Positions 6,033 through 36,100 of a stretch of 64,000 nt of DNA are shown here, one piece after another. A program made the translations under genes and the position numbers. The DNA lies in NCBI RefSeq assembly GCF_052425735.1, contig NC_135766.1, forward strand, positions 27,962,001 to 28,026,000. Reading direction: 5' to 3'. How positions within the stretch are numbered: position 1 is the stretch's first letter; each line of letters starts with the position of its first letter. This DNA comes from Oculina patagonica (Eukaryota). The notes beneath the pieces are model-generated. The model saw only the letters and a list, made by a program, of their open reading frames with translations. It was not told the DNA's origin and did not search any database.

Positions 6033-6198
6033 TCATCTTTGTGGGGGTCGTGGAGGTCTCTTGAGGTTGGAAGACGTCTTGGATTGTACCACAGGTTTTC
6101 CAGTATGCCAGTAAGATTTCTGGATCGCGAATCCGTCCACAGAGATAGATAAAGTCTTGGAAGGAATCTTAGTGAACTCCTTTCCTCCGCTGTTATAC
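6033..6198 (-). CDS. CAMSAP: CAMSAP exon 19, end of CKK and stop
   Basis: YNSGGKEFTKIPSKTLSISVDGFAIQKSYW...PPQR*, TGA at 6035-6033. Confidence 0.92.
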
Positions 6199-9100: not shown

Positions 9101-12100
9101 TTTTTGTGGAGGGGGGGGGGGGGTGAAAAATATTGAAAAAATTGTTTGCAGGGCCTAAAAAGACAAAATAAATTGTTTGCAAACACGATACGTATAACAA
9201 AAAATAGTTAGAATTTCGAAAAAAATGTTTGCAGAGGTGTATGAACTAAAAAAAAAAGTTTGCAGAGAAAAATGTTTCATTCCCCCCCCCCCCCCCTCCA
9301 AGAACATAATGGTCCGTCCCTAACATAAAAGAAGCAAAACACTACTGAGGATTGAAAACAAGATCTGAGAATTACTGTGCCTGCAATGTTGGCCGGTTCT
9401 TAAGTGACGAAAATCATGTTACAAATTTTGACGCAAAAAAACGCGAAGCCAACAAGTCGCTTACAATAGAAGTAAATTTTTCCAATCCCAGATTCAACAT
9501 ATTTACTTGTTGCAGCGTGACTTACCTTCTCTTTTTCTCCATTTCTGCTTCTTTTCGAGTTTTATCCTCCTCTTGTTTCTTCTGTCTCAACCTCATAAAC
9601 TTCTCTCGCTTACGTTCTTGCTCTGGAGTCAAGCCCTACATAAGCAAAAAAAAAGAGATCTAAATTTGAATTCTCCCGACTGATTTCCATACATTTCTTT
9701 TAATATTAGCTGTGAGAACTTGGTGGTTAATCAAGACTTATCTCCTAGTTGATGTTTTTCTAAATTCTCATCACCTGCCTGCTTGATGACGTATCGATAT
9801 TGTATGGAGAAGATGAATGTGATCACAATTATACGTTTGGTCTTTGAGCTTCCGTGTTCCGTTTTGGTTTCTTTGCTTTAAACCTTTTTCTGGAGAAATC
9901 ATTCAAATTTTAAGACCAAATCATATCTAACAACTTATATCGTCTGTGGAAGTGAAGGTGGAGTCTGCGTCGAGCCAAGTGGCCCATACCGCCGGAGTTT
10001 AAAATGGGTTTTGTTGCATGAAGCGACTAGGAGTATTCCTACTACCCCCTTGGATGGGATGATAGTCCATCGCAGGGTTACCGCCCAAGCATTAATTCGC
10101 CGATACTCATTCATACACCTTGGAGGATGTAGGCACTATGAAAGAAAAGTGTCTTGCCCAAGAACACAACGCAGTGCCCCGGCCAGGGCTCGAACTCGGA
10201 CCGCTCGATCTGGAGTCCGGCGCACTAACCATTAGGTCACGGAGGAAGTGAAAGCAATACTAATCACCTGAAATTCTCCAAAAAAAATATGGCCAAAAGC
10301 CACTAAAAAGTATTATATTTTTCTGCAAGTACACAACAGTTTACCTGTGCTGCGGGGCTTGCGTCCTCACCAATAAACATTGCTAATCCTCTCTTGTTAG
10401 GGGTCTGAATATCCACCTCAATTTCTCTCGCACCACCTCCCGGAGGGTTTTCTTGCTTGGTGTCCGTACTCATAGAAGTCGTGTCCGGTTGCACCAAGGG
10501 GGGTGGAGTGGGTACTTGAGCAACGTCTACATCCCAACATTTTCGCACGGGAGCCGTGTAGCGGGAAGCCGCTGGATCGTGCGAGGACGGGCGTGGTGGT
10601 ACTGGCGTTGGCCTGGAACCGACTTCGACCGCTGGTTGGGATGACGGGCGCACCGTATCCTGATTAGTACCCAGACCATCAACAGGCGGGTAATCAGAAA
10701 GACGAAACTCACGAGTTTCAAACTGCGGTCCACTGGAGGGACTGGGCTTCGAGACAGACGCCGGTTGTGGAGAGTTGGCTGGGGATGACCAAGCGATGGG
10801 AGGGGAGGGTGAATTGGGAAACTCAGCCACAGGATTTCTCGGTTTATCGTGGACAGGAGGCTTGTCCGAGTGGACCACCTAACAAAGAAAATTACATTAA
10901 CATCTTAGCAACTGAAATCTAGGACAACTTAACCACAAGATATTTTTATTGTCAAACGATGACAAGCAAACTTCTCACCTCAGGCTCAGTTCCTTCTCCG
11001 ACGTTCTGACCTCCTTGAGCCTTTCCCATGACATACCAAAACGCAGTCTGCCCCAGTCTCCGTCGCTGATCTTCCCACTCGGCCTGGGCGCGGTGTTTTT
11101 CTGCCTCGATATGACGCCGCTTTTCCTCCAGTTGCATGCGCAAGTAAGCCATTTGTGACGTCACGGCCTTTTCATCTTCAACTGCGTCTGGCGTCTCTTC
11201 GATTTCACCTAAAACACAAGACCTTGTTAGTCGTCACGTAATGCAGTATCACGCAACCTGTAATTAAGCGTCACGCAATGCAAGGTTGTGTTACTTTGCA
11301 CAAAGTGAAGGCTGGTACTGGACAGGAGAGGCTTCTGGCTGCAGTAAGAGGAGATCGTCGAGTTTACAAAAAAATGAAATTACTTCGAAGCATTTTTCTA
11401 GGATAACCTTGTGGAGTCTGTTGATGAAATGCTAGTGTGTGGCCATTCAAATGAAAGCCACTGAGCATTTCTTTTACGTGGTACTGTTTATTATGCTATG
11501 CAAGGTGGTTTTAACTTTTGAGTCTGTGGATAAAACCCAAGTGTGTGACTATTCAAATGAAAGCCACTGAGCAGTTCTTTCACGTGGTACAGTTTATTAT
11601 GCTGCACAAGGTGGTTTTAACTTTTGAGTCTGTGGATAAAACCCAAGTGTGTGACTATTCAAGTAAAAGCTATTGAGCAGTTCCGTTCATGACGATGGTT
11701 CTAACTTTAAAGTCTGTGGATGACCATTCAAATGAAAGCTATTGAGCAGTACTTTCATGTGGTAGTGTTTGATTTGCTGTACAAGGTGTCTCTAACTTTC
11801 AAATCTGTAGATGAAACCCTAGTGTGTGACCATTCAAATGAAAGCTATCGAGCTATGCTATTTTGTGGTTCTGTTTATTTTTAAACATTCTATATAAAAT
11901 GAACAAGATGAACTTGTCCTCTCCCGGGAGTAGAGAATTTATCATTATTGAACCAACCTTCAGCGTCACAAGGCAAGTCAGATACTTGACTAAGAACATC
12001 AGAAGGGGACATCCCACAATCATCTGCAGCGTCCATTAGACTCGCGATCTTATCTAACACACTTCCACTAGGGCGCCACGTGGCTCGTCCGCGGGAAGCT

Positions 12101-15100
12101 GCAGTGTTTGCATCAGATTTGAGCTCCACTGATTCAGGGCCCCTAGAAGGTGCCGAGCTTTTGATATCTTTTTCGACACTGACGGCGTTTGCTTCGTTAT
12201 TGTTAACATTAACCTCTTCAACTTTGTTGTTAACAATCTGAAATTTCGACATGTTTGGTTGTTGTGGACTATTTGAAGAAAAAATCTCAACGACAAATGC
12301 ATCAGAGTTTGATTGCTGTGAGTTCGATTTCTTGGATATCTGGCGTTTTGGTTTTGGAGGCGACTTCTTTTTCCGTGAAGTAGAAGGTTTTTCAAGCGTT
12401 TTGTCCGGAATATCTGTGGAAACATTCTTTTCGTTTTCTTTGCATTCGATCTCTTTAGCATGATCTGTTTTTAGCCCAGCACTGTTCAATGACAATTTTT
12501 CCAGAGCCTCGATTACAGGTATACCACGTGATAACTCGCGTTCCACCGAGCCGCTCACGTGGTCTAGCGTAAACGTTCTGCGGTTTTCATCCTGGTCGAC
12601 CATTGAAGACTGCGTCATGTTTGCAGCATGAATTGTGTTCTCCTTCACTTGTGAACCCACAATTTTTGCTAAATCCAGCTCTTCGTTAGAACTATCAAGA
12701 ATGAACGTATTGCTTCGGTGGCGCGAAGACTCAAAACTATGCGAAGAGATATCATAATCAGACAGCGACGACAGAAAACCGGAATCGACAGACCGTGGTC
12801 TAACGTCCCGGGAAGACGAAACCGGTTCAACAGGCTTTTCAGAAGCAAAGCTGTCCAGGAAGTCATTTAAAGACGTACCAGATTGAAAGGCCTGCTGCAC
12901 AGCAAAGGCGACGTCATCTAGCGAATAAGCTTTCCGTATGGGAGGGGGGTAAGGTGACCCATGGGGTGAGGGGTTGGGCGATTGCTCTCGTGATGGTTTA
13001 AGATGGCGGATAGGTGTTTCCGAATGACGTTTTCGTTTCCGGTTATCTTTGTCTAAAGACACTGTCTGAATGTCTCCACCCAATGCAGTTCTTGAGAACT
13101 CTGCGAGTTCATTAGTGAGTTGATCCAGTGCTTGAATAACAGGTATTCCCGCCTTTTTGGCGTCTTCAAGTGTTCTGGGCATGTCCTCTAGTGAATGAGT
13201 GTACCTCTTAGATGACTGTTTCTCGCTACCTTCGTTGATGAGTTCTGAATCGGATTTGGAGTTGAGACGCTTTAGATTACTCCTCCGCGTGCTACCAGTT
13301 TTTTCAACAGATGTTACAGTTTTTAGCGCATCTACAATTGGAATTCCTGCTGCTTTTGCATCGTCAATAGACTCTGAAACACTGTCTAAAGAGTAAGTAC
13401 GACGCTCGGTTTGACCACCATCGGTACAAGATTTGAAATCAGGATGAATTTCGTAAGATCTTCGCACAGATTCGTCTGTCGTCGGATTGTTCCGAGTATT
13501 CTCCGGAAGCGAAGCAGTCTCCTGTTGATCTTTTGAAATCTCCTTAGCATTTGCCTGCAACAATAGCTCGCACGCTGAAGTCAAGAAATCTAACTTTTGT
13601 ACAACACCTAAGCCCCTAGCCTTGTTTTCATTGCTGTTTGTTTTTGATGCAGTTATATCTTTTGTTTTCATGTGTAAACTCAGCGGTGACATCATCTGCC
13701 TCTGACTCCCATCGTACAAACGCAGCTTTGTTCCTTCTCCAATCGTCTCCAACGGACTCGCCAGAGCATAAGTCTTTCTGTTGACCAGTTTCTCTTGTCT
13801 TCGGTGAACAGCATCTGGTGTCTGTCTGTAAGAAACATCTTTAGACCCTGTAATTTGTCCTAACGCATCGACAACAGGAAGGCCTTTCTGTTTCGCTTTT
13901 TCTAACGTATGACTCACTTCATCTAGTGTGTATGTTCCTCGGTTTTCTGGACTTCTTTCAGGGATTTTAAGTCTAAGTGGACTCGCTGGTTTTCCTTTTG
14001 ATAGAGACTCTAGGGCTTCAACAACAGGTATTCCAGTTTTCTCAGCGTGCTCTAGGGACTTTGACACTTGATCCAGGGTGTACGTGCCTCGTTTCTGTGC
14101 ACTCTCTCCAGTCCTTCCAGCTGGCTCGTTAGCTCTTGTTATGTTCTTCAAAGCTTCCACTACAGGAATACCCTGTTGTGATGCAGTCTGAAGCGAAAGA
14201 GAAACTTCATCTAGCGTGTAAGTTCCTCTTTTTTGATCAGACAGTTGAGTCTTTTCAACGCCGTCCTTGGGAAGAGCCTTCGTTTGAGATAAACCCTCTA
14301 ACGTTTCAATCACGGGAACGCCGTCTTTGACACCGTCTTCAACAGAGTTCGCGACGTCGTCAAGATTATACGTTCCACGCTTCTCTAGCACCTCAGGAGA
14401 CGTTTGTTTCCGACCGGATGACGGTTGTTCCCGATCAGAAGACGATTGTTCCCGATCAGAAGACGATTGTTCCCGATCAGGAGACGATCGTTCGCGATCA
14501 GGAGACGACCGCTTCCGATTAGTTAACCGTCGTTCGTGATCAGAAGCCGATGGGAACGATACAAAAGTCAGGCAATCCTCAAGTTGCTCCAAAGCATCTT
14601 CAAAGGAAGCCTCGATCTCGTCCCGATGGTCGGGCGACAGTGGCCTGGGATCAAGGTGGGTTTTGAGTCCTTGCGCAACCTCGCCAGCGGAAGAATCGTC
14701 ATATCCATGCGCTGGGGACTGCCGCAAAGGTGTTTCTTCCTGAGCTAAGTGATTTAATGTCACGGATACTGGAATCCCTTTCTCCACTGCTTCTTCTATA
14801 GCGTGCGAAACCGTATCTAACGAGTACGTCCCCCTATTCGGGGATGGTTTTGAGTAGGCAATGTCCTCTGAAGGTGTATTAACTGGCAGATTGGATTCAT
14901 GTTTGGATGCTAGCTGATCTAGCACATCTACAGCTGGTAAGCCCTTGCTTTGAGCATCTTCTAAAGACTGCGACACTGTGTCCAGGGTGAAAGTACCACG
15001 CTTTGGAACCGAGTCAATTTGCGTTAGAGAGTCTTCGACACCAGACAAATTTGATGATTTCAATTCTTCACGTTTGGCGAGCTGACATAAAACCTCAGTA

Positions 15101-18100
15101 ACTGGCAAACCTTCCTCAGCTCCACTTTGCAAAGACGACGAAACTGCGTCCAAAGTGTAAGTCGATCGCTTCTCTGAAGATTCGTGTTTCATTTCCAATG
15201 ATAAATCTTCTTTTGTTAAAGTATCAGCAGCGACAGTTTTATTTTGAAGAGAATTTTCTTCCTTACTCTTGGCCGTTTCTTGTAAACCGTCAGCAATTAA
15301 TCCCTCTTGTCTAATCGCGTTATCTATTTCTTGAGACACGCTCTCTAAAGTGAACGTACTCCGCTTCTGCGAGTTTTCACTTGGCACCAATGAAGTATCA
15401 TCATCCGACTGCAGTTTGCTTTGTTTAAATTCCTCCTTATTCGCAAGGTCGTTCAGTACATTGGCCACAAACAATCCTTCGCTATTAGCAGTCTCTATAG
15501 ACTGGGATACAGAATCTAAGGTGAAAGTACTACGTTTTGGGACGTGGTCGCTCGACGGTAAAACTGTCCCTTGATTAGATTCTTCTTTACTAGCAAGTTC
15601 GTTTAATACCTTAACGATTGGTAAGCCTTCGTTGGACACTGTCTCTAGAGTAAACGTATTTCGTTTTAGCAGATGCGGTACTTTAAAATCGCTTTTATCT
15701 TTACAATCCTCCTGCGTTGATTTAACATCGTCCGAAGCAGTTTCAACAAGTAATTCTCCGTTTGCTGCTCTCTCCGTGAATCGTTTGTCCGAAACAAAAG
15801 AATTCTCATACTGTTTCTGCGCTGTTTTTACATTAGTTGATGTATCTGCGAAATTGTCGTCCTTTGCAAAGACGTCGCTTCCGGGGTTTGAATCATCTTT
15901 CGGCGAGGAAGCCAGAAAACCTCTCTCACTAACTTTCGACGTTGAAGTAGGTTGTGCACCTTGGGTCTGACAGGGCTTGGCTTTTTGTTGGCGTCTAAGG
16001 TTTGAACGCGTTTTAAAGGCCTTAAACGGCGACTGCAGTAGAACTGGTTCATCTTTAGCGCGTTTCGAACGTGGTTCATCATCAAAGCTCAGCTCAAACG
16101 CTATAGATCTGTCCTGCACGGCCCCGATCTCACTGCTACTTACAAGCTGCGATTGAGAAACAACTACCTCGTCCTTTCCTTCCAGATTGCTAGGTTTAAA
16201 TCTTGACAAAACACGAGGCGGAGGTCGATTTTTAGCTGTATTTTGAAATCCAACGTCGAATGCGACAGCATTTTTCGCGGAGATTTGGGACAGCCCTGTA
16301 TTTTTGCTTGATTTTGAAGCATCCGCGAATAAATCTGCTTTTACACCTCCGCGCGTTTTGTCCTCAGACGGTTGCGTGACGGAAGTTTTCTTGGACTGTT
16401 CCCTGCCTGGTGTCACGTTTAACCGTGTCACGCCAGCTGCCGCGGACAGCGCCGCTATTCTGTCACGGATACTTCCGCCAGCACGCGTATCTGTGTCAGT
16501 CTCGGATGTGGTCCAACTTGATAACATGTTACCTTCTTTTTGAAATATCTCTTTAGATGATTTAGATTCATTATCCAAAAGACTGCTCGTATCAGTAGCA
16601 TTTATCTGCGACTCTGAGCCATTAAACAGTACGTGTCCATTTGTGTGCGAAGAGGGACCACCACGCGAATGTGCTCTTAGCCATAAGTCTTCAGGTGCCT
16701 TCACCCCATTTTCTTGCCCCTTCCATGGGGCTGCTTCGTCATCATGACGCAGTTTTGGGCGGAAAACCGCTGTTGCTATGAAATGCGGTTTTTCATTAAC
16801 AGACAATTCGTCAACAAAAGGCTGTGTCCTAGTTTCTCCCTGCATGCAACCTGCAAAATTAAATAAAAATTAAATTTATTATCTCACAGTAAGAAAAGCT
16901 GGAATGAAAATAGCAGACAAGCAAAAATGTTAATAGAAAAAAAAAATGTCAGCTTAAGCTTTGCTAAAAGGCAACAGGTCGCTGCGTATAAAAGGCGAGA
17001 GCTGGTCACTTTCGTAGGGTTTACACGTAAGAACTGATATACAGAAAATTTCAATGTTAAAAAAGAATAATGTGTTCGCTAATCGAAGCTACCACAGTTT
17101 TAGAAGCTGTAACAACCAGCATAAGAGATGAGAAATTGAAAAATATGAAGCTTTTGCTTATTCACACTTTCATCTGCAACTCACATGTATGATTCATTTC
17201 ATAAATACATTACCATGTTAAAACTATATTGTTTTAAGGTAGTTTATGCTAGCGAGTAACCATGGACAACCAAAATAATCACTCGTGATATTCGCAACTT
17301 TAAAGAAGTTTATTTTTATCAGACAGAGCAGACGCTAGATCAAAAGGTTATGGAAATTTTGAAGAATAAAACTTTTCATTTGCGCTTAATTATGGAAATA
17401 TAATGGCAACTATTTCTGCCATTAAATTAGACTGCAAAAAAGTCTGTTTATGTCCACAAAATTGACACGATCGAACATGAAAAGGCAGAGCTTGCAGACA
17501 ATAAACAGAATCTACTGTCAAATATTCGTGACACTGAAAAACAATATACTGTAAAAAAGATATTGAGAAAGCATCTGTCAATGCCATTTATTATTTTAAT
17601 ATTTACACAAAACGCGCCGAACGACCCCTGAAGAGACAAAAATGCCCAAAATGTAAACAAGATGTAAGATTAGTTTTTAACAGAAAATACATACATCAAA
17701 ACTACCTATGTAAACAGTGAGTAAAAGGAAAATTTAAACAACAACAAAATGTCTATTCCCTGGTTACAATGTGAGTGACTGTGTCAAGTCTATACGATAA
17801 CAATTTTAAATGTATTAATAATTATAAATATTCAATATCAGCTCAACAGAAAATATTAATTTTTTCCCAAGAACGATTTCGCAAGAATTTACGTGACATA
17901 TCGAAGATGAAACTATTACAAGCAATTAAGCAAAGATCTGTTTTAAAAACAAGAGCCTTATTAGAACAGAACACTTTTATAAAGGTCGCAATTTTCTGCT
18001 CACGAAATATGGAATAAAAAACCCGCTGATATAATGCACTGTAATGCATTCAAGATAACAATTATTTCAGATCTGCCTAAGCCCATGCTAAGCGTCGAAG

Positions 18101-21100
18101 TCATAATGTGAAACTGAAGGTTTAGAACACAAAGCTACACAATAATATATAGATCTGTTAATCTACCTTGAATTCTGTTCCACAAAGCATCAGATTCCCA
18201 CGATTTGATACACTCAACACTAAAGGCACCAGAAATATAAACACGCTAGTTTCCGGTGGCGTTCTGGTGGAATAATTTGGCGATCTACGAAGCGTGTTCG
18301 CTCAGTTTTTCGTAGAATTTCTCAGAGGAATTCTGTCAAGAGTTAAAGCACGAAGATTGAAGAGATAACACCAATCAAGTGCGGTGAAAACCATGCCAGG
18401 TTATTTGCCTACCATAACATCACGTCCTGCTGTCGGTCGATCGCACGGTGCTTCGAATACAACAGCCGTTTCAAATGTAGTCCTCAATATAAACCGCGGA
18501 AGGCTATTTCTGAAATATGACGATGAACTCAGACAGTGGCTCACTCGTTCCTAGGGAATGACATCACCACTGCTGAATGCACAAGCGACATTTCCCACAC
18601 TAACGGCGAAGCGACAGCGAAGAGTACATTATAAAAACACACGTAGTCTATCCAAGGACTGTTCGCAAATTTGGCGTTTTCCTTGCTTGTTTTCGTTTCG
18701 GTTCTTACACTGTAAGCCACTCTTAACACACCTAAGGGATCACTGAAGTCACGGCCCGGTAAAAACAACACAAGATCCGATTAAAACACTCAAAAATTAT
18801 ATACTGTGCCACGACATCCAAGTTAATGTATTCAGTTCTTACATGCAAATTATAGAACTCGCCGCGCGAAGGCGAAGTATCAACAATTATATTATCATGC
18901 ATATATTATTTATCAATATAGTTAAAAGACTGTCGATAGACTCACCTTATTTTTCGGCGGTTTAAGATATTTCTTTGTATCCAGAGGAGATACGGCTTCA
19001 AAAGCGTCTTTACCGTAAAGATATCGACACCAATGTAATGCTTTTAACCCCAGTCAGTCAAGCGTATCTGATGAACGTCATCGAGTACACGCGAAAACAC
19101 GGTCACACAACTTACAAATGTAACGCGCGGATAACAAAACTGAAATCAAACGTATGTTTCGATTAAAAACACTTCCAGCTCTCTATCAGACGAGAAACTT
19201 TTCTGCAACTCACGGACGAACGAATGACAAAGTCATAAATGGCTGTAATCCAGTAAAAGAATCGATTGTTGTGAAATGGAAATTATGTTCAGGATTTCTT
19301 GCCAAGGAAAATTAATTTCTTAGCCACACCTCGGAATAACTTCATAAGTCGGAAGCGACACGGATTATGCAAAATCACAGCCGGATTTCCACACCTTAAA
19401 TTGCGTCTAATTTTAACCAAACTGAAAGGTTATTTATTTCGCTGTTATTCCCCAGCGCCTGGCGGCATGCAAGGTATTTGTTTTGGACGTAAATCCGTTT
19501 CCATAAGACTAATTTTTTTTGCCATAGGATGGGTAGAAGCCCGGGGTAGGAGGGAGATTTCTAACGTCATTTTCTGTTTATCCCACAAGCTTCACTATGA
19601 TCAAAGCTTAAGACTTAACGGGGCTTTGTCGCGGATTTTAAACCAAATATATATATCTGTGTCGCAGGAAACCAAAAAAATTAATGGTATACTTTTATTA
19701 ACAATTGCCATATTTGAGCACTGAAACTGTTGACAAACGTCTTTGGCGGCGGATGGCAAGGATGGAATTGGATTACAACTTGAAAAAATTAATTAAGGCT
19801 AAACTTTTCAAGTTGTTTCTGCGCTTCTTTAAAAAAAAATCGATATTTATAGGCGTAGTTTTATTTCTCCCCACAAATTAAGGTTATATCTTTCTTCAGA
19901 TGTTCAAAAATTACGTTTTTCACGAGTTCAGGTGCCTACCACTTATTTCAGAACAGTTTAGACCACTAATTCCCCGTGATGTAGCTTCTTCAAAGCGGTG
20001 CAGACAGGGCATAAAAGGTTTTTAGTTTCTTAGCGAGGTTTGGAAGTTCCTATAAACAGAATAACATGCCAAGGATTGTTATGCGTGTGAAAAAGAACCA
20101 GAGTTTTTCATCCTTGGAGACCATCAAGAAGATGATGGGTTGGAAAAAAGTTCAAAAGATGGGAAAACTTGCCAACAAAAAGTGTGATTTTATATTATTG
20201 TAACTTCCACTCACTCTAATGATCTACCTCTGGGTTTCAAGGATGTAGTCTCAATAGTTTTTATTTTTACAGTACACTGTTGGCTCATTTATCACTATAA
20301 TCATTTCATTGCCTGCGTCACAGAAAGTATAAACCGCGGACTATATCGAGAATTTTGTGACATGTCCGGCTACAACACAGGCTATAGCTATGCTAAAAGA
20401 GCCTTTCTTCTAAATTCCACCTTCACGATCAGACAGCCAGAAATGCGGTATCTTACGGCAAACCACACCGAAATATATGTACGTCACTTGTGAATAATAT
20501 TTCCTTTGATAAGATGAAATGTTCAAAATGTCACGTGCTTGGGACAAAGAAAGAATCCTGAAGTCCCCGACGGGAATTAAACCCATGCCCTCCCAGATAC
20601 CGGTTGGGCGCTCTTACCAACTGAGCTACGAGAGACTCGTGGTGAGCTGGGCCATTTACTAGGTTGATTTGGGACATGCCTCCTGAATACCTTTGTACGA
20701 TGTTTCTCCACTGTCCAGTACCAGCCAACATAATGTGCAACAACACTCCGCACCGTCCCCTCCCTGCTATTCTTACCTTTGTCATTCAACATCACTTGCC
20801 CTCCTACACCACTCTTAGCTGCTGTCAGCCAACTGATCCTCGCCCCGGGGCTCCCGCGGCCTGTCTGTCTGGGGCTGCCACGCCTCCTGGGACTGCCTGT
20901 TTCATGACTCTCCTGGGTGGCCTGCTGCTAAAAGAAACAAAATTAATCAATCAATAAAAATTTATTTATCCGAGGCTGACTAGGCCCCTAGCAATCATAT
21001 GCTAATATACCGAGAAAATAAATAAAAATGTGTATATACAGAACGAAAAATTAATTAATCGAAAATTATTAAATTCAATTCAATTCATAAAAAGAAACTA

Positions 21101-27100: not shown

Positions 27101-30100
27101 AGTCCAGCGCACTAACCATTAGGCCACTGAGTTCACCTCTGTGCAAGTAAAAGCATTACTAATCACCTGCAATTTTTCCAAAAAAAATGGGAGGCGAAAA
27201 GTACACAACAGTTTACCTGTGCTGCGGGGCTTGCGTCCTCACCAATAAACATTGCTAATCCTCTCTTGTTAGGGGTCTGAATATCCACCTCAATTTCTCT
27301 CGCACCACCTCCCGGAGGGTTTTCTTGCTTGGTGTCCGTACTCATTGAAGTCGTGTCCGGTTGCACCAAGGGGGGTGGAGTGCGTACTTGAGCAACATCT
27401 ACATCCCAACATTTTCGCACGGGAGCCGTGTAGCGGGAAGCCGCTGGATCGTGCGAGGACGGGCGTGGTGGCACTGGTGTGGGCCTGGAACCGACTTCGA
27501 CCGCTGGTTGGGATGACGGGCGCGCTGTATCCTGATTAGTACCCAGACCATCACCAGGCGGGTAATCAGAAAGACGGAATTCACGAGTTTCAAACTGAGA
27601 TCCACTGGAGGGACTGGGCTTAGAGACGGACGCAGGTTGTGGAGAGTTAGCTGGGGACGACCAAGCAATGGGAGGGGAGGGTTGATTGGGAAACTCAGCC
27701 ACAGGATTTCTCGGTTTATCGTGGACAGGAGGATTGTCCGAGTGGGCCACCTAACAAAGAAAATTACATTAACATCTTAGCAACTGAAATCTAGGACAAC
27801 TTAACCACAAGATATTTTTATTTTACGATGATAAGCAAACTTCTCACCTCAGGCCCAGTTCCTTCTCCGACGTTCTGACCTCCTTGAGCCTTTCCCATGA
27901 CATACCAAAACGCAGTCTGCCCCAGTCTCCGTCGCTGATCTTCCCACTCGGCCTGGGCGCGGTGTTTTTCTGCCTCGATATGACGCCGCTTTTCCTCCAG
28001 TTGCATGCGCAAGTAAGCCATCTGTGACGTCACGGCCTTTTCATCTTCAACTGCGTCTGGCGTCTCTTCGATTTCACCTAAAACACAAGACCTTGTTAGT
28101 CGTTACAAAATGCAGTGTCACGCAACGTGTAATTAAGCGTCACACAAGGCAAGGTCGTGTTACTTTGCACAAAGTGAAGGCTGGTACTGAACAGGAGAGG
28201 CTTCTGGCTGCAGTAAGAGGAGATCGTCGAGTTTACAAAAAAAATGAAATCAATTCGAAGCATTTTTCTAGGATAACCTTGTGGATTCTGTTGATAAAAT
28301 GCATGACTATTTAAATGAGCAGTTCTTTCACGTGGTACTGTTTATTATGCTGTACAAGGTGGTTTTAACTTTTGAGTCTGTGGATAAAACCCAAGTGTGT
28401 GACCATTCAAGTAAATGCTATTGAGCAGTTCGTTCATGACGATGGTTCTAACTTTAAAGTCTGTGGATGACCATTCAAATGAAAGCTATTGAGCGGTACT
28501 TTCATGTGGTAGTGTTTGATTTGCTGTACAAGGTGTCTCTAACTTTAAAATCTGTAGATGAAACCCTAGTGTGTGACCATTCAAATGAAAGCTATTGAGC
28601 TGTGCTTTTATGTGGTTCTGTTTATTTTTAAACATTCTATAAAAATGAACTTGTCCTCTCCCGGGAGTAGAGAATTTATCATTATTGAACCAACCTTCAG
28701 CGTCACAAGGCAAGTCAGATACTTGACTAAGAACATCAGAAGGAGACATCCCACAATCATCTGCGGCGTCCATTAGACTCGCGATCTTATCTAACACACT
28801 ACCACTAGGGCGCCACGTGGCTCGTCCGCGGGGAGGTGCAGTGTTTGCATCAGTTTTGAGCTCCGCCGATTCAGGGTCCCTAGAGGGTTCCGTGCTTTTG
28901 ATATCTTTTTCAGGATTGGCGACGTTTGCTTCGTTATTGATGACGTTAACCTCTTCAACTTTGTTAACAATTTGAAATTTCGACATGTTCGGTTGTTGTG
29001 GACCATTTGAAGAAAAAAACTCAACGACTAATGCATCAGAGTTTAATTGCTGTGAGTTCGATTTCTTGGATATCTGGCGTTTTGGTTTTGGTGGCGACTT
29101 CTTTTTCCGTGAAGTAGAAGGTTTTTCAAGCGTTTTGTCCGGAATTTCTGTGAAAACATTCTTTTCGTTTTCTTTGCATTCGATCTCTTTAGCATGATCT
29201 GTTTTTAGCCCAGCACTGTTCAATGACAATTTTTCCAGAGCCTCGATTACAGGTATACCACGTGATAACTCGCGTTCCACCGAGCCGCTCACGTAGTCTA
29301 GCGTAAACGTTCTGCGGTTCTCATCCTGGTCGACCATTGGAGACTGCGTCGTGTTTGCGGCATGAATTGTGTCCTGCTTCACTTGTGAACCCACAATTTT
29401 TGCTAAATCCAGCTCTTCGTTAGAGCTATCAAGAATGAACGTGTTGCTTCGGTTGCGCGAAGACTCAAAACTATGCGAAGAGATATCATAATCAGACAGC
29501 GACGATAGAAAACCGGAATCGGCAGACCGTGGTCTAACGTCCCGGGAAGACGAAACCGGTTCAACAGGCTTTTCAGTAGCAAAGCTGTCCAGGAAGTCAT
29601 TTAAAGACGTACCAGATTGAAACGCCTGCTGCACAGCAAAGGCGACGTCATCTAGCGAATAGGCTTTCCGTATGGGAGGGGGGTAAGGTGACCCATGGGG
29701 TGAGGGGTTAGGCGATTGCTCTCGTGTTGGTTTAAGATGGCCGATAGGTGTTTCCGAATGACGTTTTCGTTTCCGGTTATCTTTGTCTAAAGACACTGTC
29801 TGAATGTCTCCACCCAATGCAGTTCTTGAGAACTCTGCGAGTTCATTAGTGAGTTGATCCAGTGCTTGAATAACAGGTATTCCCGCCTTCTTGGCGTCTT
29901 CAAGTGTTCTGGGCATGTCCTCTAGCGAATGAGTGTACCTCTTAGATGACTGTTTCTCGCTACCTTCGTTGATGAGTTCTGAATCAGATTTGGAGTTGAG
30001 ACGCTTTAGATTACTCCTCCGCGTTGTACCAGTTTTTGCAACAGATGTTACAGTTTTAAGCGCATCTACGATTGGAATTCCTGCTGCTTTTGCATCGTCA

Positions 30101-33100
30101 ATAGACTGTGAGACGCTGTCTAAAGAGTATGTACGACGCTCGGTTTGACTGCCATCAGTAATGGATTTGAAATCAGGATGAATTTCGTGCGATCTTCGCA
30201 CAGATTCGTCCGTCGTCGGATTGTTCCGAGTATTCTCCGGAAGCGAGGCAGTCTGCTGTTGATCTTTTGAAATCTCCTTAGCATTTGCCTGCAACAAAAG
30301 CTCGCACGCTGAAGTCAAGAAATCTAACTTTTGTACAACACCTAAACCTCTAGCCTTGTTTTCATTGCTGTTTGCTTTTGATGCGGTTATTTCTTTTGTT
30401 TTAATGTGTAAACTCAGCGGTGACATCATCTGCCTTTGGCTCCCATCGTACAAACGCAGCTTTGTTCCTTCTCCAATCGTCTCCAACGGACTCGCCAGAG
30501 CATAAGTCTTTCTGTTGACCAGTTTTTCTTGTCTTCGATGAACAGCATCTGGTGTCTGTCTAAAAGAAACATCTTTAGACGCTGTCATTTGTCCTAACGC
30601 ATCCACAACAGGAAGGCCTTTCTGTTTCGCTTTTTCTAACGTATGACTCACTTCATCTAGAGTGTATGTTCCTCGGTTTTCTGGACTTCTTTCAGGGATT
30701 TTAAGTCTAAGTGGACTCGCTGGTTTTCCTTTTGATAGAGACTCTAGGGCTTCAACAACAGGTATTCCAGTTTTCTCAGCGTGCTCTAGGGACTTTGACA
30801 CTTGATCCAGGGTGTAGGTGCCTCGTTTCTGTGCACTCTCTCCAGTCCCTCCTGCTGGCTCGTCAGCTCTTGTCATGTTCTTCAAAGCTTCCACAACAGG
30901 AATGCCCTGTTGTGATGCAGTCTGCAGCGAAAGAGAAACTTCATCCAGCGTGTAAGTTCCTCTTCTTTTATCAGACAGTTGAGTCTTTTCAACGTCGTCC
31001 TTGGGAAGAGTCCTTGTTTTAGATAAACCCTTTAACGTTACAATCACAGGAACGCCGTCTTTGACACCGTCTTCAACAGAGTTCGCGACGTCGTCCAGAT
31101 TATACGTGCCACGCTTCTCTTGCGATTGTTCCCGACGAGAAGACGACTGTTCCCGATCAGAACACGATTGTTCCCGATCAGAACACGATTGTTCCCGATC
31201 AGGAGACAATCGATCCCGCTCAGGAGACGATCGTTCGTGATCAAGAGACGACTGCCTCCGATTAGTAAATCGTCGTTCGCGATCAGAAGCCGATGGGAAC
31301 GATACAAAAGTCAGGCAATCCTCAAGTTGCTCCAAAGCATCTTCAAAGGAAGCCTCGATCTCGTCCCGATGGTCGGGCGACAGTGGCCTGGGATCAAGGT
31401 GGGTTTTGGTTCCTTGCGCAACCTCGCCAGCGGAAGAATCGTCATATCCATGCGCAGGGGACCGCCGCAAAGGTGTTTCTTCCTGAGCTAAGTGATTTAA
31501 TGTCACAGATACTGGAACACCTCTCTCCACTGCTTCCTCTATAGCGTGCGAAACCGTATCCATTGTGTATGTCCCTCTATTCGGGGATGGTTTCGAGTTG
31601 GCGTTGTTCTCTGGAGGTGTATTTACTGGCAGATTGGATTCTTGTTTGGATGCTAGCTGATCTAGCACATCTACAGTTGGTAAGCCCTTGCTTTGAGCAT
31701 CTTCTAAAGACTGCGACACTGTGTCCAGGGTGAAAGTACCACGCTTTGGAACCGAGTCAATTTGCGTTAGAGAGTCTTCGACACCAGACAAATTTGATGA
31801 TTTCAATTCTTCACGTTTGGCGAGCTGGCATAAAACCTCGGTAGCAGTCAAGCCTTCTTCAGCTCCACTTTGTAAAGACGACGAAACTGCGTCCAACGTG
31901 TAAGTCGATCGCTTCTCTGAAGATTCGTGTTTCATTTCCAATGGTAAATCTTCTCTTGTTTCAGTATCAACAGCGACAGTTTTATTCTGAAGAGAATTTT
32001 CCTCTTCACTCTTGGCCGCTTCTTGTAAACCGTCAGCCATTAATCCTTCTCGTCTAATCGCGTTATCTATTTCTTGAGACACGCTATCTAAAGTGAACGT
32101 ACTTCGCTTCTGCGAGTTTTCACTCACTGGTAGCGAGGAAGTATCAACATCCGACTGCAGTTTGCTTTGTTTAAATTCCTCCTTGTTCGCCAGATCGTTC
32201 AGTACATCGGACACAGGCAATCCTTCGCTACTAGCAGTCTCTATGGACTGGGATACAGAATCTAAGGTGAAAGTACTACGTTTTGGGACGTGGTCGCTCG
32301 ACGGTAAAACTGTCCCTTGATTAGATTCTTCTTTACTAGCAAGATCGTTTAATACCTTAACGATTGGTAAGCCTTCGTTGGAAACTGTCTCTAAAGTAAA
32401 AGTGTTTCGTTTTAGCAGCTGCGGTACTTTAAAATCGCTCTTATCTTTACAATCCTCCTGCGTTGATTTAACATTGCCCGAAGCAGTTTCAACAGGTAAT
32501 TCTCCGTTTGCTGCTTTCTCCGTAAATTGTTTGTCTGCAGCAAAAGAAATCTCATACTGTTTCTGCGCTGTTTTTACATTAGTTGATGTATCTGCGGATT
32601 TATCGCTCTTTGCAAAGACATCGCGGTTGGGTTTTGAATCATCTTTCGGCGAGGAGACCAGAAAACCTCTCTCACTAACTTTCGACGTCGAAGTAGGTTG
32701 TGTACCTTGGGGCTGACAGGGCTTGGCTTTTTGTTGGCGCCTGAGGTTTGAACGCGATTTAAAAGCCTTGAACGGCGACTGCAGTAAAACTGGTTCATCT
32801 TTGGCGCGTTTCGAACGCGGTTCATCATCAAAGCTCAGCGCAAACGCTATAGATTTGTCCTGCACGGCCCCGATCTCACTGCTACTTACAAGCTGCGATT
32901 CAGAAACAAGTGCCTCGTCCTTTCCTTCCAGATTGCTAGGTTTAAATCTTGACAAAACACGAGGCGGAGATCGATTTTTAGGTGTATTTTGAAATCCAAC
33001 GTCGAATGCGACAGCATTTTTCGCGGAGATTTGGGACAGCTCCTGTTGATTTTCTGTATTTTTGCTTGATTTTGAAGCATCCGCGAATAAATCTGCTTTT

Positions 33101-36100
33101 ACACCTCGGCGCGTTTTGTCCTCAGATGGTTGCGTGACGGATTTAGTTAAAGTTATCTTCGACTGTTCCCTGCCTGGTGTCACGTTTAACCGTGTTACGC
33201 CAGCTGCCGCGGACAGCGCCGCTATTCTGTCACGGATACTTCCGCCTGCACGCGTATCTGTGTCAGTCTCGGATGTGGTCCAACTTGATAACATGTTACC
33301 TTCTTTTCGAAATATCTCTTTAGATGATTTAGATTCATTATCCAAAGGAGCATTTATCTGCGACTCTGAGCCATTAAAAGGCATGTGTCCATTGGCATGC
33401 GAAAAGGGACCACCACGCGTAAGTGCTCTCAGCCCTTCTTCGGGTACCTTCGCCCCATTTTCTTGCCCCTTCCATGGGGCTGCTTCGTCATCATGACGCA
33501 GTTTTGGGCGGAAAACCGCTCTTGCTATGAAACGCGGTTTTCCATTAACAGACAATTCGTCAGCAAAAGGCTCTGTCCTAGTGTCTTTCTGCATGCAACC
33601 TACAAAATCAAATAATATTTAAATATATTATCTCACAGTTAGAAAAGCTAGAATGAAAATAGCAGACATAAGCAAAAATTAATGTAATATAAAAACAATA
33701 CTATCAGCTAACGCTTTGCTTAAAAGGCAACAACTTGCTGCGCATAAAAGGCGAGAGCTGGTCACTTTTGTAAATTTGCGCGTAAGAACTGATATACAAA
33801 ACCTTCAATATTGAAAGCTGTTCGCTAATCGAAGTTACCTTGCAGTTTAAAAAGCTGTAAAACCCAGCATGAAAAACGAGAAAATTGAAAAATATGGATC
33901 TATTGCTAATTCACACTTTCATCTGCAACTCCCATGTTTGATTCATTTCATAAATACATTACTGACAATAACTTTTCACTCGACTCTGAAGATGAGTTCC
34001 GCTCAGGTTGTCGAAACGTCAGTCACCAACAACAGTTCTTTTCAGAACTACTCTCACCCGATCACACTATACGACCCACCGATACTCCTGGGTTTAAACC
34101 ATTTACTGTATTATATTTAAACTATATTGTTTTAAATTAAGGTAGCTGATGCTAGCAAGTAACCATGGACAACCAAAATAATCACTTGTGATATTCGTAA
34201 CTTTAAAAAAGTCTATTTTTATCACACAGAGCAGACGCTAGATCAAAAGGTTATGGAAATTTCGAAGAATAAAACTATCCATTTGCGCTTAATTATGGAA
34301 ATATAATAGCAACTTACAGAATAATTTTCTTCAATTTAAAAATTTAGACTGCAGACAAGTCTGTTTTTGTCTACAAAACTGACATGATCGAACGTGAAAA
34401 GGCAGAGCTTGCAGACAACAAACAGAATCTACTGTCAAATATTCGTGACACTGAAAAACAATATACTGTAAAAAAGATATTGAGAAAGCATCTGTCAATG
34501 CCATTTATTATTTTAATATTTACACAAAACGCGCCGAACGACCCCTGAAGAGACAAAAATGCCCAAAATGTAAACAAGATGGAAGATTAGTTTTTGACAG
34601 AAAATACATACATCAAAACTACCTATGTAAACAGTGAGTAAAATGAAAAATTAAACAACAACAAAATGTCTCTTCCCTGGTTACAATGTGAGTGACTGTG
34701 TCAAGTCTATACGATGACAATTTTAAATGTATTAATAATTATAAATATTCAATATCAGCCCAACAGAAAATATTAATTTTCCCCAAGAACGATTTCGCAA
34801 GTATTTACGTGACATGTCGAATATGAAACTATTACAAGCAATTAAGCAAAGATCTGTTTTAAAAACAAGAGTCTTATTAGAACAGAACACTTTTATATGC
34901 TCGCAATTTTCTGCTCACGAAATATGGAATAAAAAACCCGCTGATATAATGCACTGTAATGCATTCAAGATAACAATTATTTCAGATCTGCCTAAGCCCA
35001 TGCTAAGCGTCGAAGTCATAATGTGAAACTGAAGGTTTAGAACACAAAGCTACACAATAATATATAGATCTGTTAATCTACCTTGAATTCTGTTCCACAA
35101 AGCATCAGATTCCCACGATTTGATACACTCAACACTAAAGGCACCAGAAATATAAACACGCTAGTTTCCGGTGGCGTTCTGGTGGAATAATTTGGCGATC
35201 TACGAAGCGTGTTCGCTCAGTTTTTCGTAGAATTTCTCAGAGGAATTCTGTCAAGAGTTAAAGCACGAAGATTGAAGAGATAACACCAATCAAGTGCGGT
35301 GAAAACCACGCCAGGTTATTTGCCGACCATAACATCACGTCTTGCTGTCGGTCGATTGCATGGTGCTTCGAATACAACAGCCGTTTCAAATGCAGTCTTC
35401 AATATAAACCGCGGAAGGCTATTTCTGAAATATGACGATCGACTCAGACACTGGCTATCTCGTTCCTAGGGAATGACATCACCACTGCTGAATGTACAAG
35501 CGACATTTCCCACACAAACAGCGAAGCGATAGCGAAGAGTACATTATAAAAACACACGTAGACTATCCACGGCTGTTCACAAATTTGGCGTTTTCCTTGC
35601 TTGTTTTCGTTTCGGTTCTTACACTGTAAGCCACTCCTAAGACACCTAAGAGATCACTGAAGTTCACGGCCCGGTAAAAACAACACAAGATCCGATTAAA
35701 ACACTCAAAAATTATATACAGTGCCACGACGAACAAGTTAATGTATTCAGTTATTACATGCAAATTATAGAACTCGCCGCGCGAAGGCGCTAGTATCAAC
35801 AATTATGTTATCATGCATATATTATTTATCAATATGGTTAAAAGACTGTCGATGGACTCACCTTATTTTTCGGGGGTTTAAGATATTTCTTTGTATCCAG
35901 AGGAGATACGGCTTGAAAAACGTCTTTACCGTACAGATATCGACACCAATGTAATGCTTTTAACGCCAGTCAGTCAAGCGTATCTGATGAACGTCATGGA
36001 GTACACGCGAAAACACGGTCACACAACTTACAAATGTAACGCGCGGATAACAAAACTGAAATCAAACGTATGTTTCGATAAAAAATACTACTAGTTATTC

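What the first reader, a model, noticed from the sequence alone, without database searches (positions are those of the whole stretch)
12480..15670. Unrecognised ~35-aa repeat module (about 14 full copies) in the giant exon
Seen: consensus (K/N)R-x-T-(Y/F)-(T/S)-L-D-x-V-S-x-S-L-E-x-A-x-x-x-G-(L/I)-P-V-x-(E/D)-x-L-x-x-L. Examples are KRGTFTLDTVSQSLEDAQSKGLPAVDVLDQL, KRGTYTLDEVSLSLQTASQQGIPVVEALKNI, NRGTYTLDEVSHTLEKAKQKGLPVVDALGQI and NRRTFTLDHVSGSVERELSRGIPVIEALEKL, plus 2-3 partial copies. Units are separated by variable S/T-rich linkers and are diverged at the DNA level, so this is an old protein repeat rather than a VNTR. Inference: the pattern suggests a strand followed by a helix-GxP-helix hairpin, arranged like beads on a string. 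The leading (K/R)RxT fits PKA/Aurora-type kinase consensus, suggesting a phospho-regulated multivalent docking array. The second helix (V/I-x-E-A-L-x-x-L/I) loosely resembles the IEEALQII katanin-binding peptide I recall from the equivalent region of vertebrate CAMSAP3; that link is speculative.
Basis: partly seen in the sequence, partly recalled or inferred. Interest (0 to 1): 0.8.

Follow-up and report, generated by a model that had tools for sequence, protein, structure and literature searches.

The report
New hairpin repeat in coral CAMSAP
A stony-coral gene for a protein that caps microtubule minus ends (CAMSAP) has a huge, expressed exon with about 14 copies of a small two-helix module that I found in no domain library or paper searched. 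The module occurs only in cnidarians, and what it binds is not known.

Summary
The minus-strand exon 11958-16850 (4893 nt, 1631 codons) of the coral's CAMSAP/Patronin gene holds 12 full units, one shortened unit and two degenerate units of a 35-38-aa module. It is transcribed and spliced to the CC1 exon.

AlphaFold2 predicts each unit as an independent helix-turn-helix hairpin (pLDDT 75-87) joined by disordered linkers. It predicts no strand.

The units are under stronger purifying selection than the linkers (dN/dS 0.21 against 0.43). In the 529-Mb genome the module occurs only at this locus. Among 1.84 billion proteins it turns up only in cnidarian CAMSAP giant exons: stony corals, anemones and octocorals, plus two units and arrays of the short N-terminal motif in jellyfish and hydroids.

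Pfam, PDB sequences, Foldseek and the ESM Atlas give no match.

Over 499 units, R(-2) is 98%, T is 99% (S under 1%) and Y/F(+1) is 92%. This fits the minimal Aurora/AGC kinase consensus.

RefSeq models place the exon in an isoform that lacks the CH domain.

The katanin link has no statistical support and could not be tested.

Best reading is a phospho-tunable multivalent docking array on a minus-end-binding isoform, with the partner unknown.

The scan also noted this exon as s1-274294 and s1-274355.

The parts
11958..16850 (-). Giant exon (copy 1), 4893 nt = 1631 codons, phase 1-1. Acceptor ttttgcag|GTTGC at 16851/16850, donor GAAG|gt at 11958/11957.
   Evidence: Sequence read. The spliced joint 11208|11958 (GT..AG on the minus strand) appears in contigs of 3 runs, and continuous contig cover stops at 16847-16852.
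15580..15666 (-). Unit 1 (aa 394-422), first helix shortened
   Evidence: HMM E 1.2e-8
15430..15540 (-). Unit 2 (aa 436-472)
   Evidence: HMM E 1.6e-20; leave-one-out 6e-20
15259..15372 (-). Unit 3 (aa 492-529), turn lacks Pro
   Evidence: HMM E 1e-17; leave-one-out 9e-11
15064..15177 (-). Unit 4 (aa 557-594)
   Evidence: HMM E 5e-20
14896..15006 (-). Unit 5 (aa 614-650)
   Evidence: HMM E 1.5e-21
14734..14844 (-). Unit 6 (aa 668-704)
   Evidence: HMM E 3e-20
14393..14551 (.). 21-bp VNTR (Ser/Asp/Arg/Glu-rich heptapeptide) in the long linker between units 6 and 7. It is not part of the module.
   Evidence: TRF: period 21, 5.5-7.6 copies
14275..14385 (-). Unit 7 (aa 821-857)
   Evidence: HMM E 2e-19; AlphaFold2 hairpin H13-26/H30-39
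14125..14238 (-). Unit 8 (aa 870-907)
   Evidence: HMM E 4e-21; AlphaFold2 hairpin
13990..14097 (-). Unit 9 (aa 917-952)
   Evidence: HMM E 7e-22; AlphaFold2 hairpin
13840..13947 (-). Unit 10 (aa 967-1002)
   Evidence: HMM E 2e-21; AlphaFold2 hairpin
13555..13815 (-). Non-repeat block, the most conserved part of the exon. It holds an invariant ~35-aa peptide starting with a unit-like N-R-K-T-Y-A-L and containing L-E-T-I-G-E, then a variable linker, then a 16-aa helix (VVQKLDFLTSACELLL).
   Evidence: Alignment A5, invariant across stony corals and anemones. AlphaFold2 gives low confidence for the peptide and pLDDT ~86 for the helix.
13303..13410 (-). Unit 11 (aa 1146-1181)
   Evidence: HMM E 8e-20
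13105..13215 (-). Unit 12 (aa 1211-1247)
   Evidence: HMM E 1.3e-19
12835..12936 (-). Unit 13 (aa 1304-1337), degenerate: no Thr, no G-I-P
   Evidence: HMM E 5e-4
12481..12591 (-). Unit 14 (aa 1419-1455)
   Evidence: HMM E 4e-19
11971..12081 (-). Unit 15 (aa 1589-1625), degenerate, directly before the donor to the CC1 exon
   Evidence: Seen by eye. A weak HMM hit lies on the orthologous stretch of P0050 (E 0.017). The stretch is conserved in A4.
10976..11208 (-). CAMSAP CC1 exon, to which the giant exon is spliced
   Evidence: PF17095 61 bits; joint in RNA contigs; tblastn of RefSeq models
20772..20927 (-). Small exon that precedes CC1 in the canonical isoform. The giant exon lies in the intron between it and CC1.
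   Evidence: tblastn of P0077
23152..23226 (-). Lone half-unit (R-G-S-Y-T-V ... A-A-G-I-P-V-I) in the large upstream exon of the canonical isoform
   Evidence: HMM E 4e-5. Conserved in cnidarian and mollusc CAMSAPs.
28695..33599 (-). Second copy of the giant exon (4905 nt), 14 units, about 93% identical in DNA. This is the copy used by the RefSeq models.

Best explanation
The stretch encodes about 14 copies of a cnidarian-specific 35-38-aa module. Each module has an invariant R-x-T-(Y/F) site followed directly by a small acidic two-helix hairpin: a 14-residue helix, a G-(I/L)-P turn and a 10-residue helix. The hairpins fold independently and hang on disordered Ser/Thr-rich linkers.

The exon makes up most of the N-terminal part of an alternative CAMSAP isoform. 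That isoform keeps CC1 and the minus-end-binding CKK domain. In RefSeq models of six cnidarians it lacks the CH domain.

Most likely this isoform sits on microtubule minus ends and uses the hairpins as a multivalent docking platform for many copies of one still-unknown partner. Binding would be tuned by phosphorylation of the invariant threonine by an Aurora/AGC-type basophilic kinase.

Shown: the repeat, its expression and splicing, its conservation and selection, and the predicted hairpin. Inferred: docking, multivalency as the purpose, and the phospho-switch.
For: - Gene identity: CKK and CC1 exons lie downstream on the same strand.
- Expression: contigs from four small runs in four studies cover the exon. 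Three of them carry the GT..AG-spliced joint to the CC1 exon.
- Isoform: RefSeq X1 (P0001, 2158 aa) starts 5 nt inside the exon and has CC1+CKK but no CH. The canonical X5 (P0077) has CH but not the exon. The same pattern holds in Montipora and Nematostella, and Rhopilema, Clytia and Hydra also have CH-less models. In the three medusozoans the protein starts inside a hairpin.
- Fold: four independent hairpins, pLDDT 75-87, disordered linkers, pTM 0.22.
- Selection: dN/dS is 0.21 in units, 0.43 in linkers and 0.63 in the pre-repeat part.
- Age: units align one-to-one from stony corals to anemones. Octocorals and medusozoans also carry it.
- Conserved non-polar face: Y7, L9, V12, L16, A19, I24, V27, L30 and L33 are conserved. 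That is too large a non-polar face for a 30-aa hairpin to bury alone (inference), as expected for a binding surface.
- Phospho-site: R(-2) 98%, T 99%, Y/F(+1) 92%, K/N/R(-3) 79% over 499 units. This matches the Aurora minimal consensus with Arg preferred at -2 (PMC12953774).
- Separable parts: medusozoans keep arrays of the short R-x-G-T-(Y/F)-x-L motif without hairpins. Their first hairpin lacks the R-x-T. The two parts are therefore separable.
Against: - No partner is identified, and no binding or phosphorylation was measured.
- Many conserved residues can be explained by folding alone: N-cap, hydrophobic staple and Pro at the start of helix 2.
- Thr at 99% with no Ser is unusual for a plain kinase site. 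It could be structural instead.
- The exon's 5' connection was not resolved. It is frame-preserving, so a CH-containing form of ~3600 aa is not excluded.
- The hairpin prediction rests on one AlphaFold2 run with 34 mostly close sequences.
Confidence: 0.45

Rival explanations
1. The hairpins are katanin p60N/p80C-binding modules. Their second helix would be related to the katanin-binding helix of vertebrate CAMSAP2/3, so the isoform would recruit about a dozen katanins to minus ends.
For: - Vertebrate CAMSAP2 carries a conserved P-S-I-E-E-A-L-Q-I-I-H about 200 aa before CC1. It shares a hydrophobic-x-E-A-L-x-x-hydrophobic pattern with helix 2.
- Canonical cnidarian and mollusc CAMSAPs lack that pattern.
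- CAMSAP2/3 have a katanin-binding helix next to the WDR47 site (bioRxiv 10.64898/2026.03.26.714132).
- The coral has katanin p60 and p80 genes.
Against: - The unit HMM gives the vertebrate peptide -0.1 bit and aligns it to helix 1.
- hhalign of the vertebrate central region against the giant exon does not align it.
- The profile search finds no vertebrate CAMSAP.
- That IEEALQII is the katanin-binding helix could not be checked: no PDB chain of 20 aa or more matches, and the paper is not held.
Confidence: 0.1
2. The units are passive structural beads. The array would be a long, acidic, flexible spacer or entropic tether that sets distance or excludes other proteins at minus ends, with no specific partner.
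For: - Independent hairpins on disordered linkers.
- Acidic overall, pI 5.5.
- Unit number varies between lineages, from 2 to about 17.
Against: - Sequence-specific conservation of about 12 positions over the whole of Cnidaria is more than a spacer needs. R, T, L and G are at 93-99%.
- dN/dS is 0.21 in the units.
- One-to-one orthology of units.
Confidence: 0.15
3. The hairpins pair with each other, within or between molecules, into four-helix bundles. This would cluster or condense the isoform at minus ends.
For: An exposed non-polar face on a small hairpin. Multivalency suits condensation (inference).
Against: AlphaFold2 on four tandem units packs none of them together (pTM 0.22). No other evidence bears on this either way.
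Confidence: 0.1
4. The units are microtubule- or tubulin-binding repeats of the tau/MAP kind that extend lattice binding.
For: Repeat length (~35 aa) and spacing resemble MAP repeats, and the host protein binds microtubules.
Against: Units are net acidic: hairpins -1 to -5 except one at 0, 15 units summing to -27. Known MAP repeats are basic (established knowledge). There is no similarity to any Pfam MAP repeat.
Confidence: 0.05

Closest known systems
CAMSAP/Patronin family (host gene)
   Same: CH_CAMSAP2_N, CAMSAP_CH, CC1 and CKK are all present in the canonical isoform of this locus. The giant exon is spliced to the CC1 exon.
   Different: No described CAMSAP has this repeat. King et al. (PMC4016758) describe the sequence around CC1 as showing little to no conservation. 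In RefSeq models the isoform carrying the repeat lacks the CH domain.
Lone R-G-S-Y-T-V ... A-A-G-I-P-V-(I/V) motif of canonical invertebrate CAMSAPs
   Same: It shares the N-terminal motif, helix 1 and the G-I-P turn. It is found in cnidarian and mollusc CAMSAPs 170-560 aa before CC1. It is the likely source of the repeat.
   Different: It has Ser instead of Thr, lacks the second helix and is a single copy. Vertebrates show only (R/K)-D-Y-T-V-S-(L/M)-D at a similar place, and homology there is unproven.
Katanin-binding helix of vertebrate CAMSAP2/3
   Same: A short amphipathic helix in the region before CC1, with an 8-residue pattern shared with helix 2.
   Different: There is no statistical similarity. 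The vertebrate element is a single helix, not a hairpin, and a single copy. Binding was not tested.
Multivalent short-motif arrays on disordered chains (e.g. LC8-binding TQT arrays in ASCIZ; from my own knowledge)
   Same: Many copies of one conserved element on flexible linkers, with a T-x-T core in many units.
   Different: The TQT signature is not met: the centre residue is Y/F, not Q, and the second T is only 62%. The element is a 35-aa foldable hairpin, not an 8-aa strand.
Aurora/AGC basophilic kinase substrates
   Same: (K/N/R)-R-x-T-(Y/F) fits R/K/N-R/K-x-S/T-hydrophobic, with Arg preferred at -2 (PMC12953774).
   Different: This is a pattern match only. Strict Thr (no Ser) is not a feature of the kinase consensus.

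Membership tests
CAMSAP/Patronin (gene level) | C-terminal CKK domain | tested here: met
   PF08683 at 57 and 51 bits on exons at window 24804-25019 and 8011-8130, and 162 bits on the full model P0077.
CAMSAP/Patronin (gene level) | CC1 region | tested here: met
   PF17095 at 61 bits on window 11027-11182 and 27896-28051.
CAMSAP/Patronin (gene level) | N-terminal CH domain in the same protein as the repeat | tested here: not met
   RefSeq isoforms that hold the giant exon (P0001, P0029, P0040, P0086, P0088, P0090) carry CC1 and CKK but no CH. The canonical isoform has CH. The exon's 5' connection was not resolved by reads.
Any Pfam repeat or domain family | Match above the gathering score | tested here: not met
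   The only hit is a sub-threshold Radical_SAM match (22.8 bits against 29.5) on a linker. PF27295 on some orthologues is a faint Y4kD_C hit. The five medusozoan-type ORFs have no hits.
Solved structures / known folds | Significant sequence or fold match | tested here: not met
   phmmer/hmmsearch against PDB: nothing below E 0.1. Foldseek against PDB: nothing at E 0.001 or below. ESM Atlas: no usable hit.
DNA tandem repeat / VNTR | Head-to-tail DNA copies of the unit | tested here: not met
   TRF finds only a 21-bp array in one linker. Units are 32-58% identical in protein.
Katanin-binding helix of CAMSAP2/3 | Detectable sequence relationship to the vertebrate helix | tested here: not met
   -0.1 bit, aligned to the wrong helix. 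hhalign does not align it.
Katanin-binding helix of CAMSAP2/3 | Binds the p60N/p80C heterodimer | not testable with these tools
   The coral p80 con80 domain is split over at least three exons. No unaltered sequence could be handed to complex prediction.
Aurora/AGC kinase site | R/K/N-R/K-x-S/T-hydrophobic, no Pro at +1 | tested here: met
   K/N/R 79%, R 98%, T 99%, Y/F 92% over 499 units. Consensus taken from PMC12953774.
Aurora/AGC kinase site | The residue is actually phosphorylated | not testable with these tools
   No phosphoproteome is available here.
LC8 (TQT) or EB (SxIP) motif arrays | T-Q-T anchor, or S/T-x-I/L-P in a basic context | tested here: not met
   Position 7 is Y/F/H and never Q in the top counts. 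Position 8 is T in only 62%. The residue two before I/L-P is K/Q/R/A/E rather than S/T, and the context is acidic.

The most novel reading that the evidence does not exclude
The hairpin's second helix is the cnidarian counterpart of the vertebrate CAMSAP2/3 katanin-binding helix. The long isoform would then be a 12-15-valent katanin recruiter at microtubule minus ends. An Aurora-type kinase acting on the invariant Thr would switch it on and off, and a PP2A-B56 docked on the invariant L-E-T-I-G-E peptide in the middle of the array would reverse that.
Probability: 0.08. Interest if true: 0.75.

Novelty: new variant of a known kind. Interest (0 to 1): 0.45.

Why it matters
CAMSAP/Patronin proteins organise non-centrosomal microtubules in animals. 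Their long central regions are thought to be poorly conserved apart from CC1-CC3.

Here a whole phylum keeps an alternative CAMSAP isoform that probably lacks the CH domain. About 1600 of its residues are built from a repeat I found described nowhere, with very strict sequence rules. A relic of that repeat is shared with mollusc CAMSAPs.

If the units are docking sites, the isoform would show how minus ends are coupled in bulk to another machine in early-branching animals. Nematostella, Hydra, Clytia and Hydractinia are tractable systems in which to find that partner.

It would also add a new small domain family to the catalogues.

The practical value is moderate. The function is unknown and the family is lineage-restricted.

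Tried and rejected
- Pfam on the whole exon and on medusozoan-type ORFs: nothing real.
- PF27295, listed for some orthologues, turned out to be a faint Y4kD_C hit. PF24312 is irrelevant.
- PDB by sequence, with the exon, the unit profile, the upstream exon, vertebrate CAMSAP2 and its IEEALQII region: only CKK structures for CAMSAP2, and nothing for the repeat or the peptide.
- Foldseek against PDB with the four-unit model: no match at E 0.001 or below.
- ESM Atlas by features: no usable hit.
- hhalign of the vertebrate central region against the giant exon: the only hit is a 20-column match of an S-F-D-x-S-F-D motif, E 0.025, probability 2%.
- Complex prediction with two copies of one unit: the verdict was 'no answer', which is evidence neither for nor against.
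- A katanin complex could not be set up. p80C is split over several exons and p60N is incomplete in its exon.
- Papers: the CAMSAP-katanin and WDR47-CAMSAP structure papers are not held. No paper on cnidarian CAMSAP isoforms was found.
- Logan contigs L010 and L011 proved to be genomic, not transcripts, so they did not resolve the 5' exon.
- LC8, SxIP, RVxF, LIR and YxxPhi readings of the motif were rejected on pattern (my own knowledge of those consensus sequences).

Full report
**What is there**

The window is chromosome-scale contig C9, 27962001-28026000, of a stony coral. RefSeq proteins of Oculina patagonica LOC144664608 map to it at 98-100% identity, so it is that species' annotated assembly or one very near it.

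The gene lies on the minus strand and is the coral's CAMSAP/Patronin homologue:
- CAMSAP_CC1 scores 61 bits at window 11027-11182.
- CAMSAP_CKK scores 51-57 bits at 8011-8130.
- The full canonical model P0077 has CH_CAMSAP2_N, CAMSAP_CH, CC1 and CKK.

The exon proper is 11958-16850. A polypyrimidine tract and AG precede 16850, and GT follows 11958. It is 4893 nt, or 1631 codons, in phase 1-1.

**The repeat is real**

An HMM from 12 units finds the following:
- 12 full units, E 1e-16 to 1e-22
- one unit with a shortened first helix
- one degenerate unit

A fifteenth, very diverged unit lies just before the donor site.

Several controls support this:
- Each unit is recovered by a model built from the other eleven (E 1e-10 to 3e-22).
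- In six frames of the window, hits below 0.01 fall in the two copies of the exon and in the lone half-unit of the upstream exon. Two more weak hits lie on the plus strand.
- In the whole 529-Mb genome, all 26 hits are in these two exons.
- At the DNA level there is no tandem array of the units. TRF finds only a 21-bp VNTR in one linker.

**It is expressed**

Logan contigs of four small runs from four studies cover the exon end to end. The runs hold 84-316 million letters, too little to assemble a 529-Mb genome.

Three of the runs carry a joint that removes 11209-11957 with GT..AG ends on the minus strand. That is the giant exon spliced to the CC1 exon.

Contigs stop at 16847-16852, exactly at the acceptor. 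The upstream partner exon was not seen.

**Which isoform**

In the canonical RefSeq isoform X5, a small exon (20772-20927) is joined directly to CC1. The giant exon lies in that intron and would keep the frame if included.

RefSeq isoform X1 instead starts at an ATG 5 nt inside the exon. It has CC1 and CKK but no CH domain.

Other species show the same:
- Montipora and Nematostella repeat the pattern. Rhopilema, Clytia and Hydra also have CH-less models.
- In the three medusozoans the protein begins M-F-T-L-G-D-V, which is inside a unit.
- In Dendronephthya the exon is annotated as a separate gene.

I therefore favour a CH-less isoform from an alternative start. The ~3600-aa form proposed in note s1-274294 is not excluded.

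**Structure**

AlphaFold2 was run on units 7-10 with 34 orthologues. It gives four separate helix(14)-turn(3)-helix(10) hairpins at pLDDT 75-87. Linkers are below 50 and pTM is 0.22. These are independent beads with no inter-unit packing, and no strand is predicted.

Helix 1 starts at the conserved Leu. The residue before it is T/S/D/N in 93% of units, and the one before that is Y/F. I read Y-(T/S/D/N)-L-(D/E)-x-V as an N-cap with a hydrophobic staple. This is an inference.

Units are net acidic and the exon's pI is 5.5.

**Conservation**

Between the window's two copies, dN/dS is 0.21 in units, 0.43 in linkers and 0.63 in the first 390 aa.

Units align one-to-one across stony corals and sea anemones.

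A profile search of 1.84 billion representative proteins returns only 31 hits:
- The strong hits are giant-exon ORFs of hexacorals and octocorals, named where names exist: Oculina, Montipora, Nematostella, Dendronephthya.
- A second group starts M-F-T-L-G-D-V and has two full units, then arrays of the short R-x-G-T-(Y/F)-x-L motif.
  - One of these ORFs lies directly upstream of CAMSAP CC1 and CKK exons.
  - These ORFs match the named Rhopilema, Clytia and Hydra proteins.
- Three hits are unrelated low-complexity repeats.

No bilaterian protein carries the array.

Over 499 unique units from 65 proteins, the most conserved positions are:

| Position | Frequency |
|---|---|
| R4 | 98% |
| T6 | 99% (S under 1%) |
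| L9 | 95% |
| V12 | 90% |
| G23 | 93% |
| L30 | 98% |

**Origin**

The canonical isoform has a lone half-unit (R-G-S-Y-T-V, helix 1, A-A-G-I-P-V-I) in the large upstream exon. It is conserved in anthozoans, hydrozoans and three molluscs.

Vertebrate CAMSAP2 has (R/K)-D-Y-T-V-S-(L/M)-D at a comparable distance from CC1, but homology is unproven.

This agrees with note s1-274355 that the lone copy may be the progenitor.

**Comparison with what is known**

Pfam, PDB sequences, Foldseek and the ESM Atlas give nothing.

The motif before the hairpin fits the minimal Aurora consensus, R/K/N-R/K-x-S/T-hydrophobic, with Arg preferred at -2 (PMC12953774). It also fits AGC kinases in general.

On the katanin idea:
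- IEEALQII is indeed in vertebrate CAMSAP2.
- CAMSAP2/3 have a katanin-binding helix next to the WDR47 site.
- I could not confirm that this peptide is that helix.
- The unit HMM gives it -0.1 bit, aligned to helix 1.
- hhalign does not pair it with the units.
- A katanin complex could not be modelled, because the coral p80 C-terminal domain is split over several exons.

**Verdict**

The structural reading is largely right and the phospho-site reading is pattern-true but untested. The katanin link is unsupported.

The thing is a repeat family I found described nowhere, inside a known protein family, and it is old and specific to cnidarians.

The most likely function is a phospho-tunable multivalent docking array on a minus-end-binding isoform (confidence 0.45). 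Its partner is unknown.

Noticed in passing
window 7611-23987 and 24497-40880; N gap 23997-24496: Two ~16.4-kb copies of the 3' half of the gene, about 93% identical, meet exactly at the 500-N gap. The RefSeq models use copy 2 and then jump over copy 1 to the last exons at 6036-6871. RNA contigs from different runs carry mosaics of the two copies' letters, and 20 of 38 listed variants equal copy 2. The most likely cause is two unmerged haplotype contig ends (a false duplication) rather than a real tandem duplication. Synonymous divergence between the copies is about 0.10-0.14.
   Followed up: partly
window 13708-13815 and 13555-13605 (aa 1011-1046 and 1081-1097 of the exon): The best-conserved part of the giant exon is not a hairpin unit. 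It is an invariant ~35-aa peptide predicted to be disordered. The peptide starts with a unit-like N-R-K-T-Y-A-L and contains P-L-E-T-I-G-E, which fits the PP2A-B56 LxxIxE docking pattern (PMC7108865). A conserved 16-aa helix follows it. By BLAST it is conserved in stony corals and anemones only. The PP2A reading is a pattern match only.
   Followed up: partly
window 14393-14551: A 21-bp VNTR coding a Ser/Asp/Arg/Glu-rich heptapeptide sits in the long linker between units 6 and 7.
   Followed up: no
window ~16070-16110 (aa ~247-258 of the exon); P0095 aa ~420-430: A motif (V/I)-(S/A)-F-(D/E)-x-S-F-D-(D/K)-E is shared by the pre-repeat part of the giant exon and the central region of vertebrate CAMSAP2. 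A weaker form occurs in the coral's upstream large exon. It is the top hhalign match but not significant (E 0.025, probability 2%).
   Followed up: partly
P0092 aa 679-700, P0171, P0193, P0095 aa 622-640: The lone G-S-Y-T-V ... A-A-G-I-P-V-(V/I) motif of canonical CAMSAPs is shared by cnidarians and molluscs. Vertebrate CAMSAP2 has (R/K)-D-Y-T-V-S-(L/M)-D-S-D at a similar distance before CC1. This may be an old CAMSAP motif; I found no description of it.
   Followed up: partly
window 11400-11999 (intron between the giant exon and CC1): Word depth in the RNA contigs is very high here (hundreds to about 15,000, against 10-130 on the exon). There are many rearranged joints and loose ends. It looks like a dispersed repeat or transposon fragment that is abundant in transcriptomes.
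   Followed up: no
L005 (ENA ERZ25066855), L006 (ERZ26692694): Unnamed eukaryote assemblies in ENA carry the same gene layout: giant ORF, then CC1 and CKK exons. L005 looks scyphozoan by its similarity to Rhopilema.
   Followed up: partly
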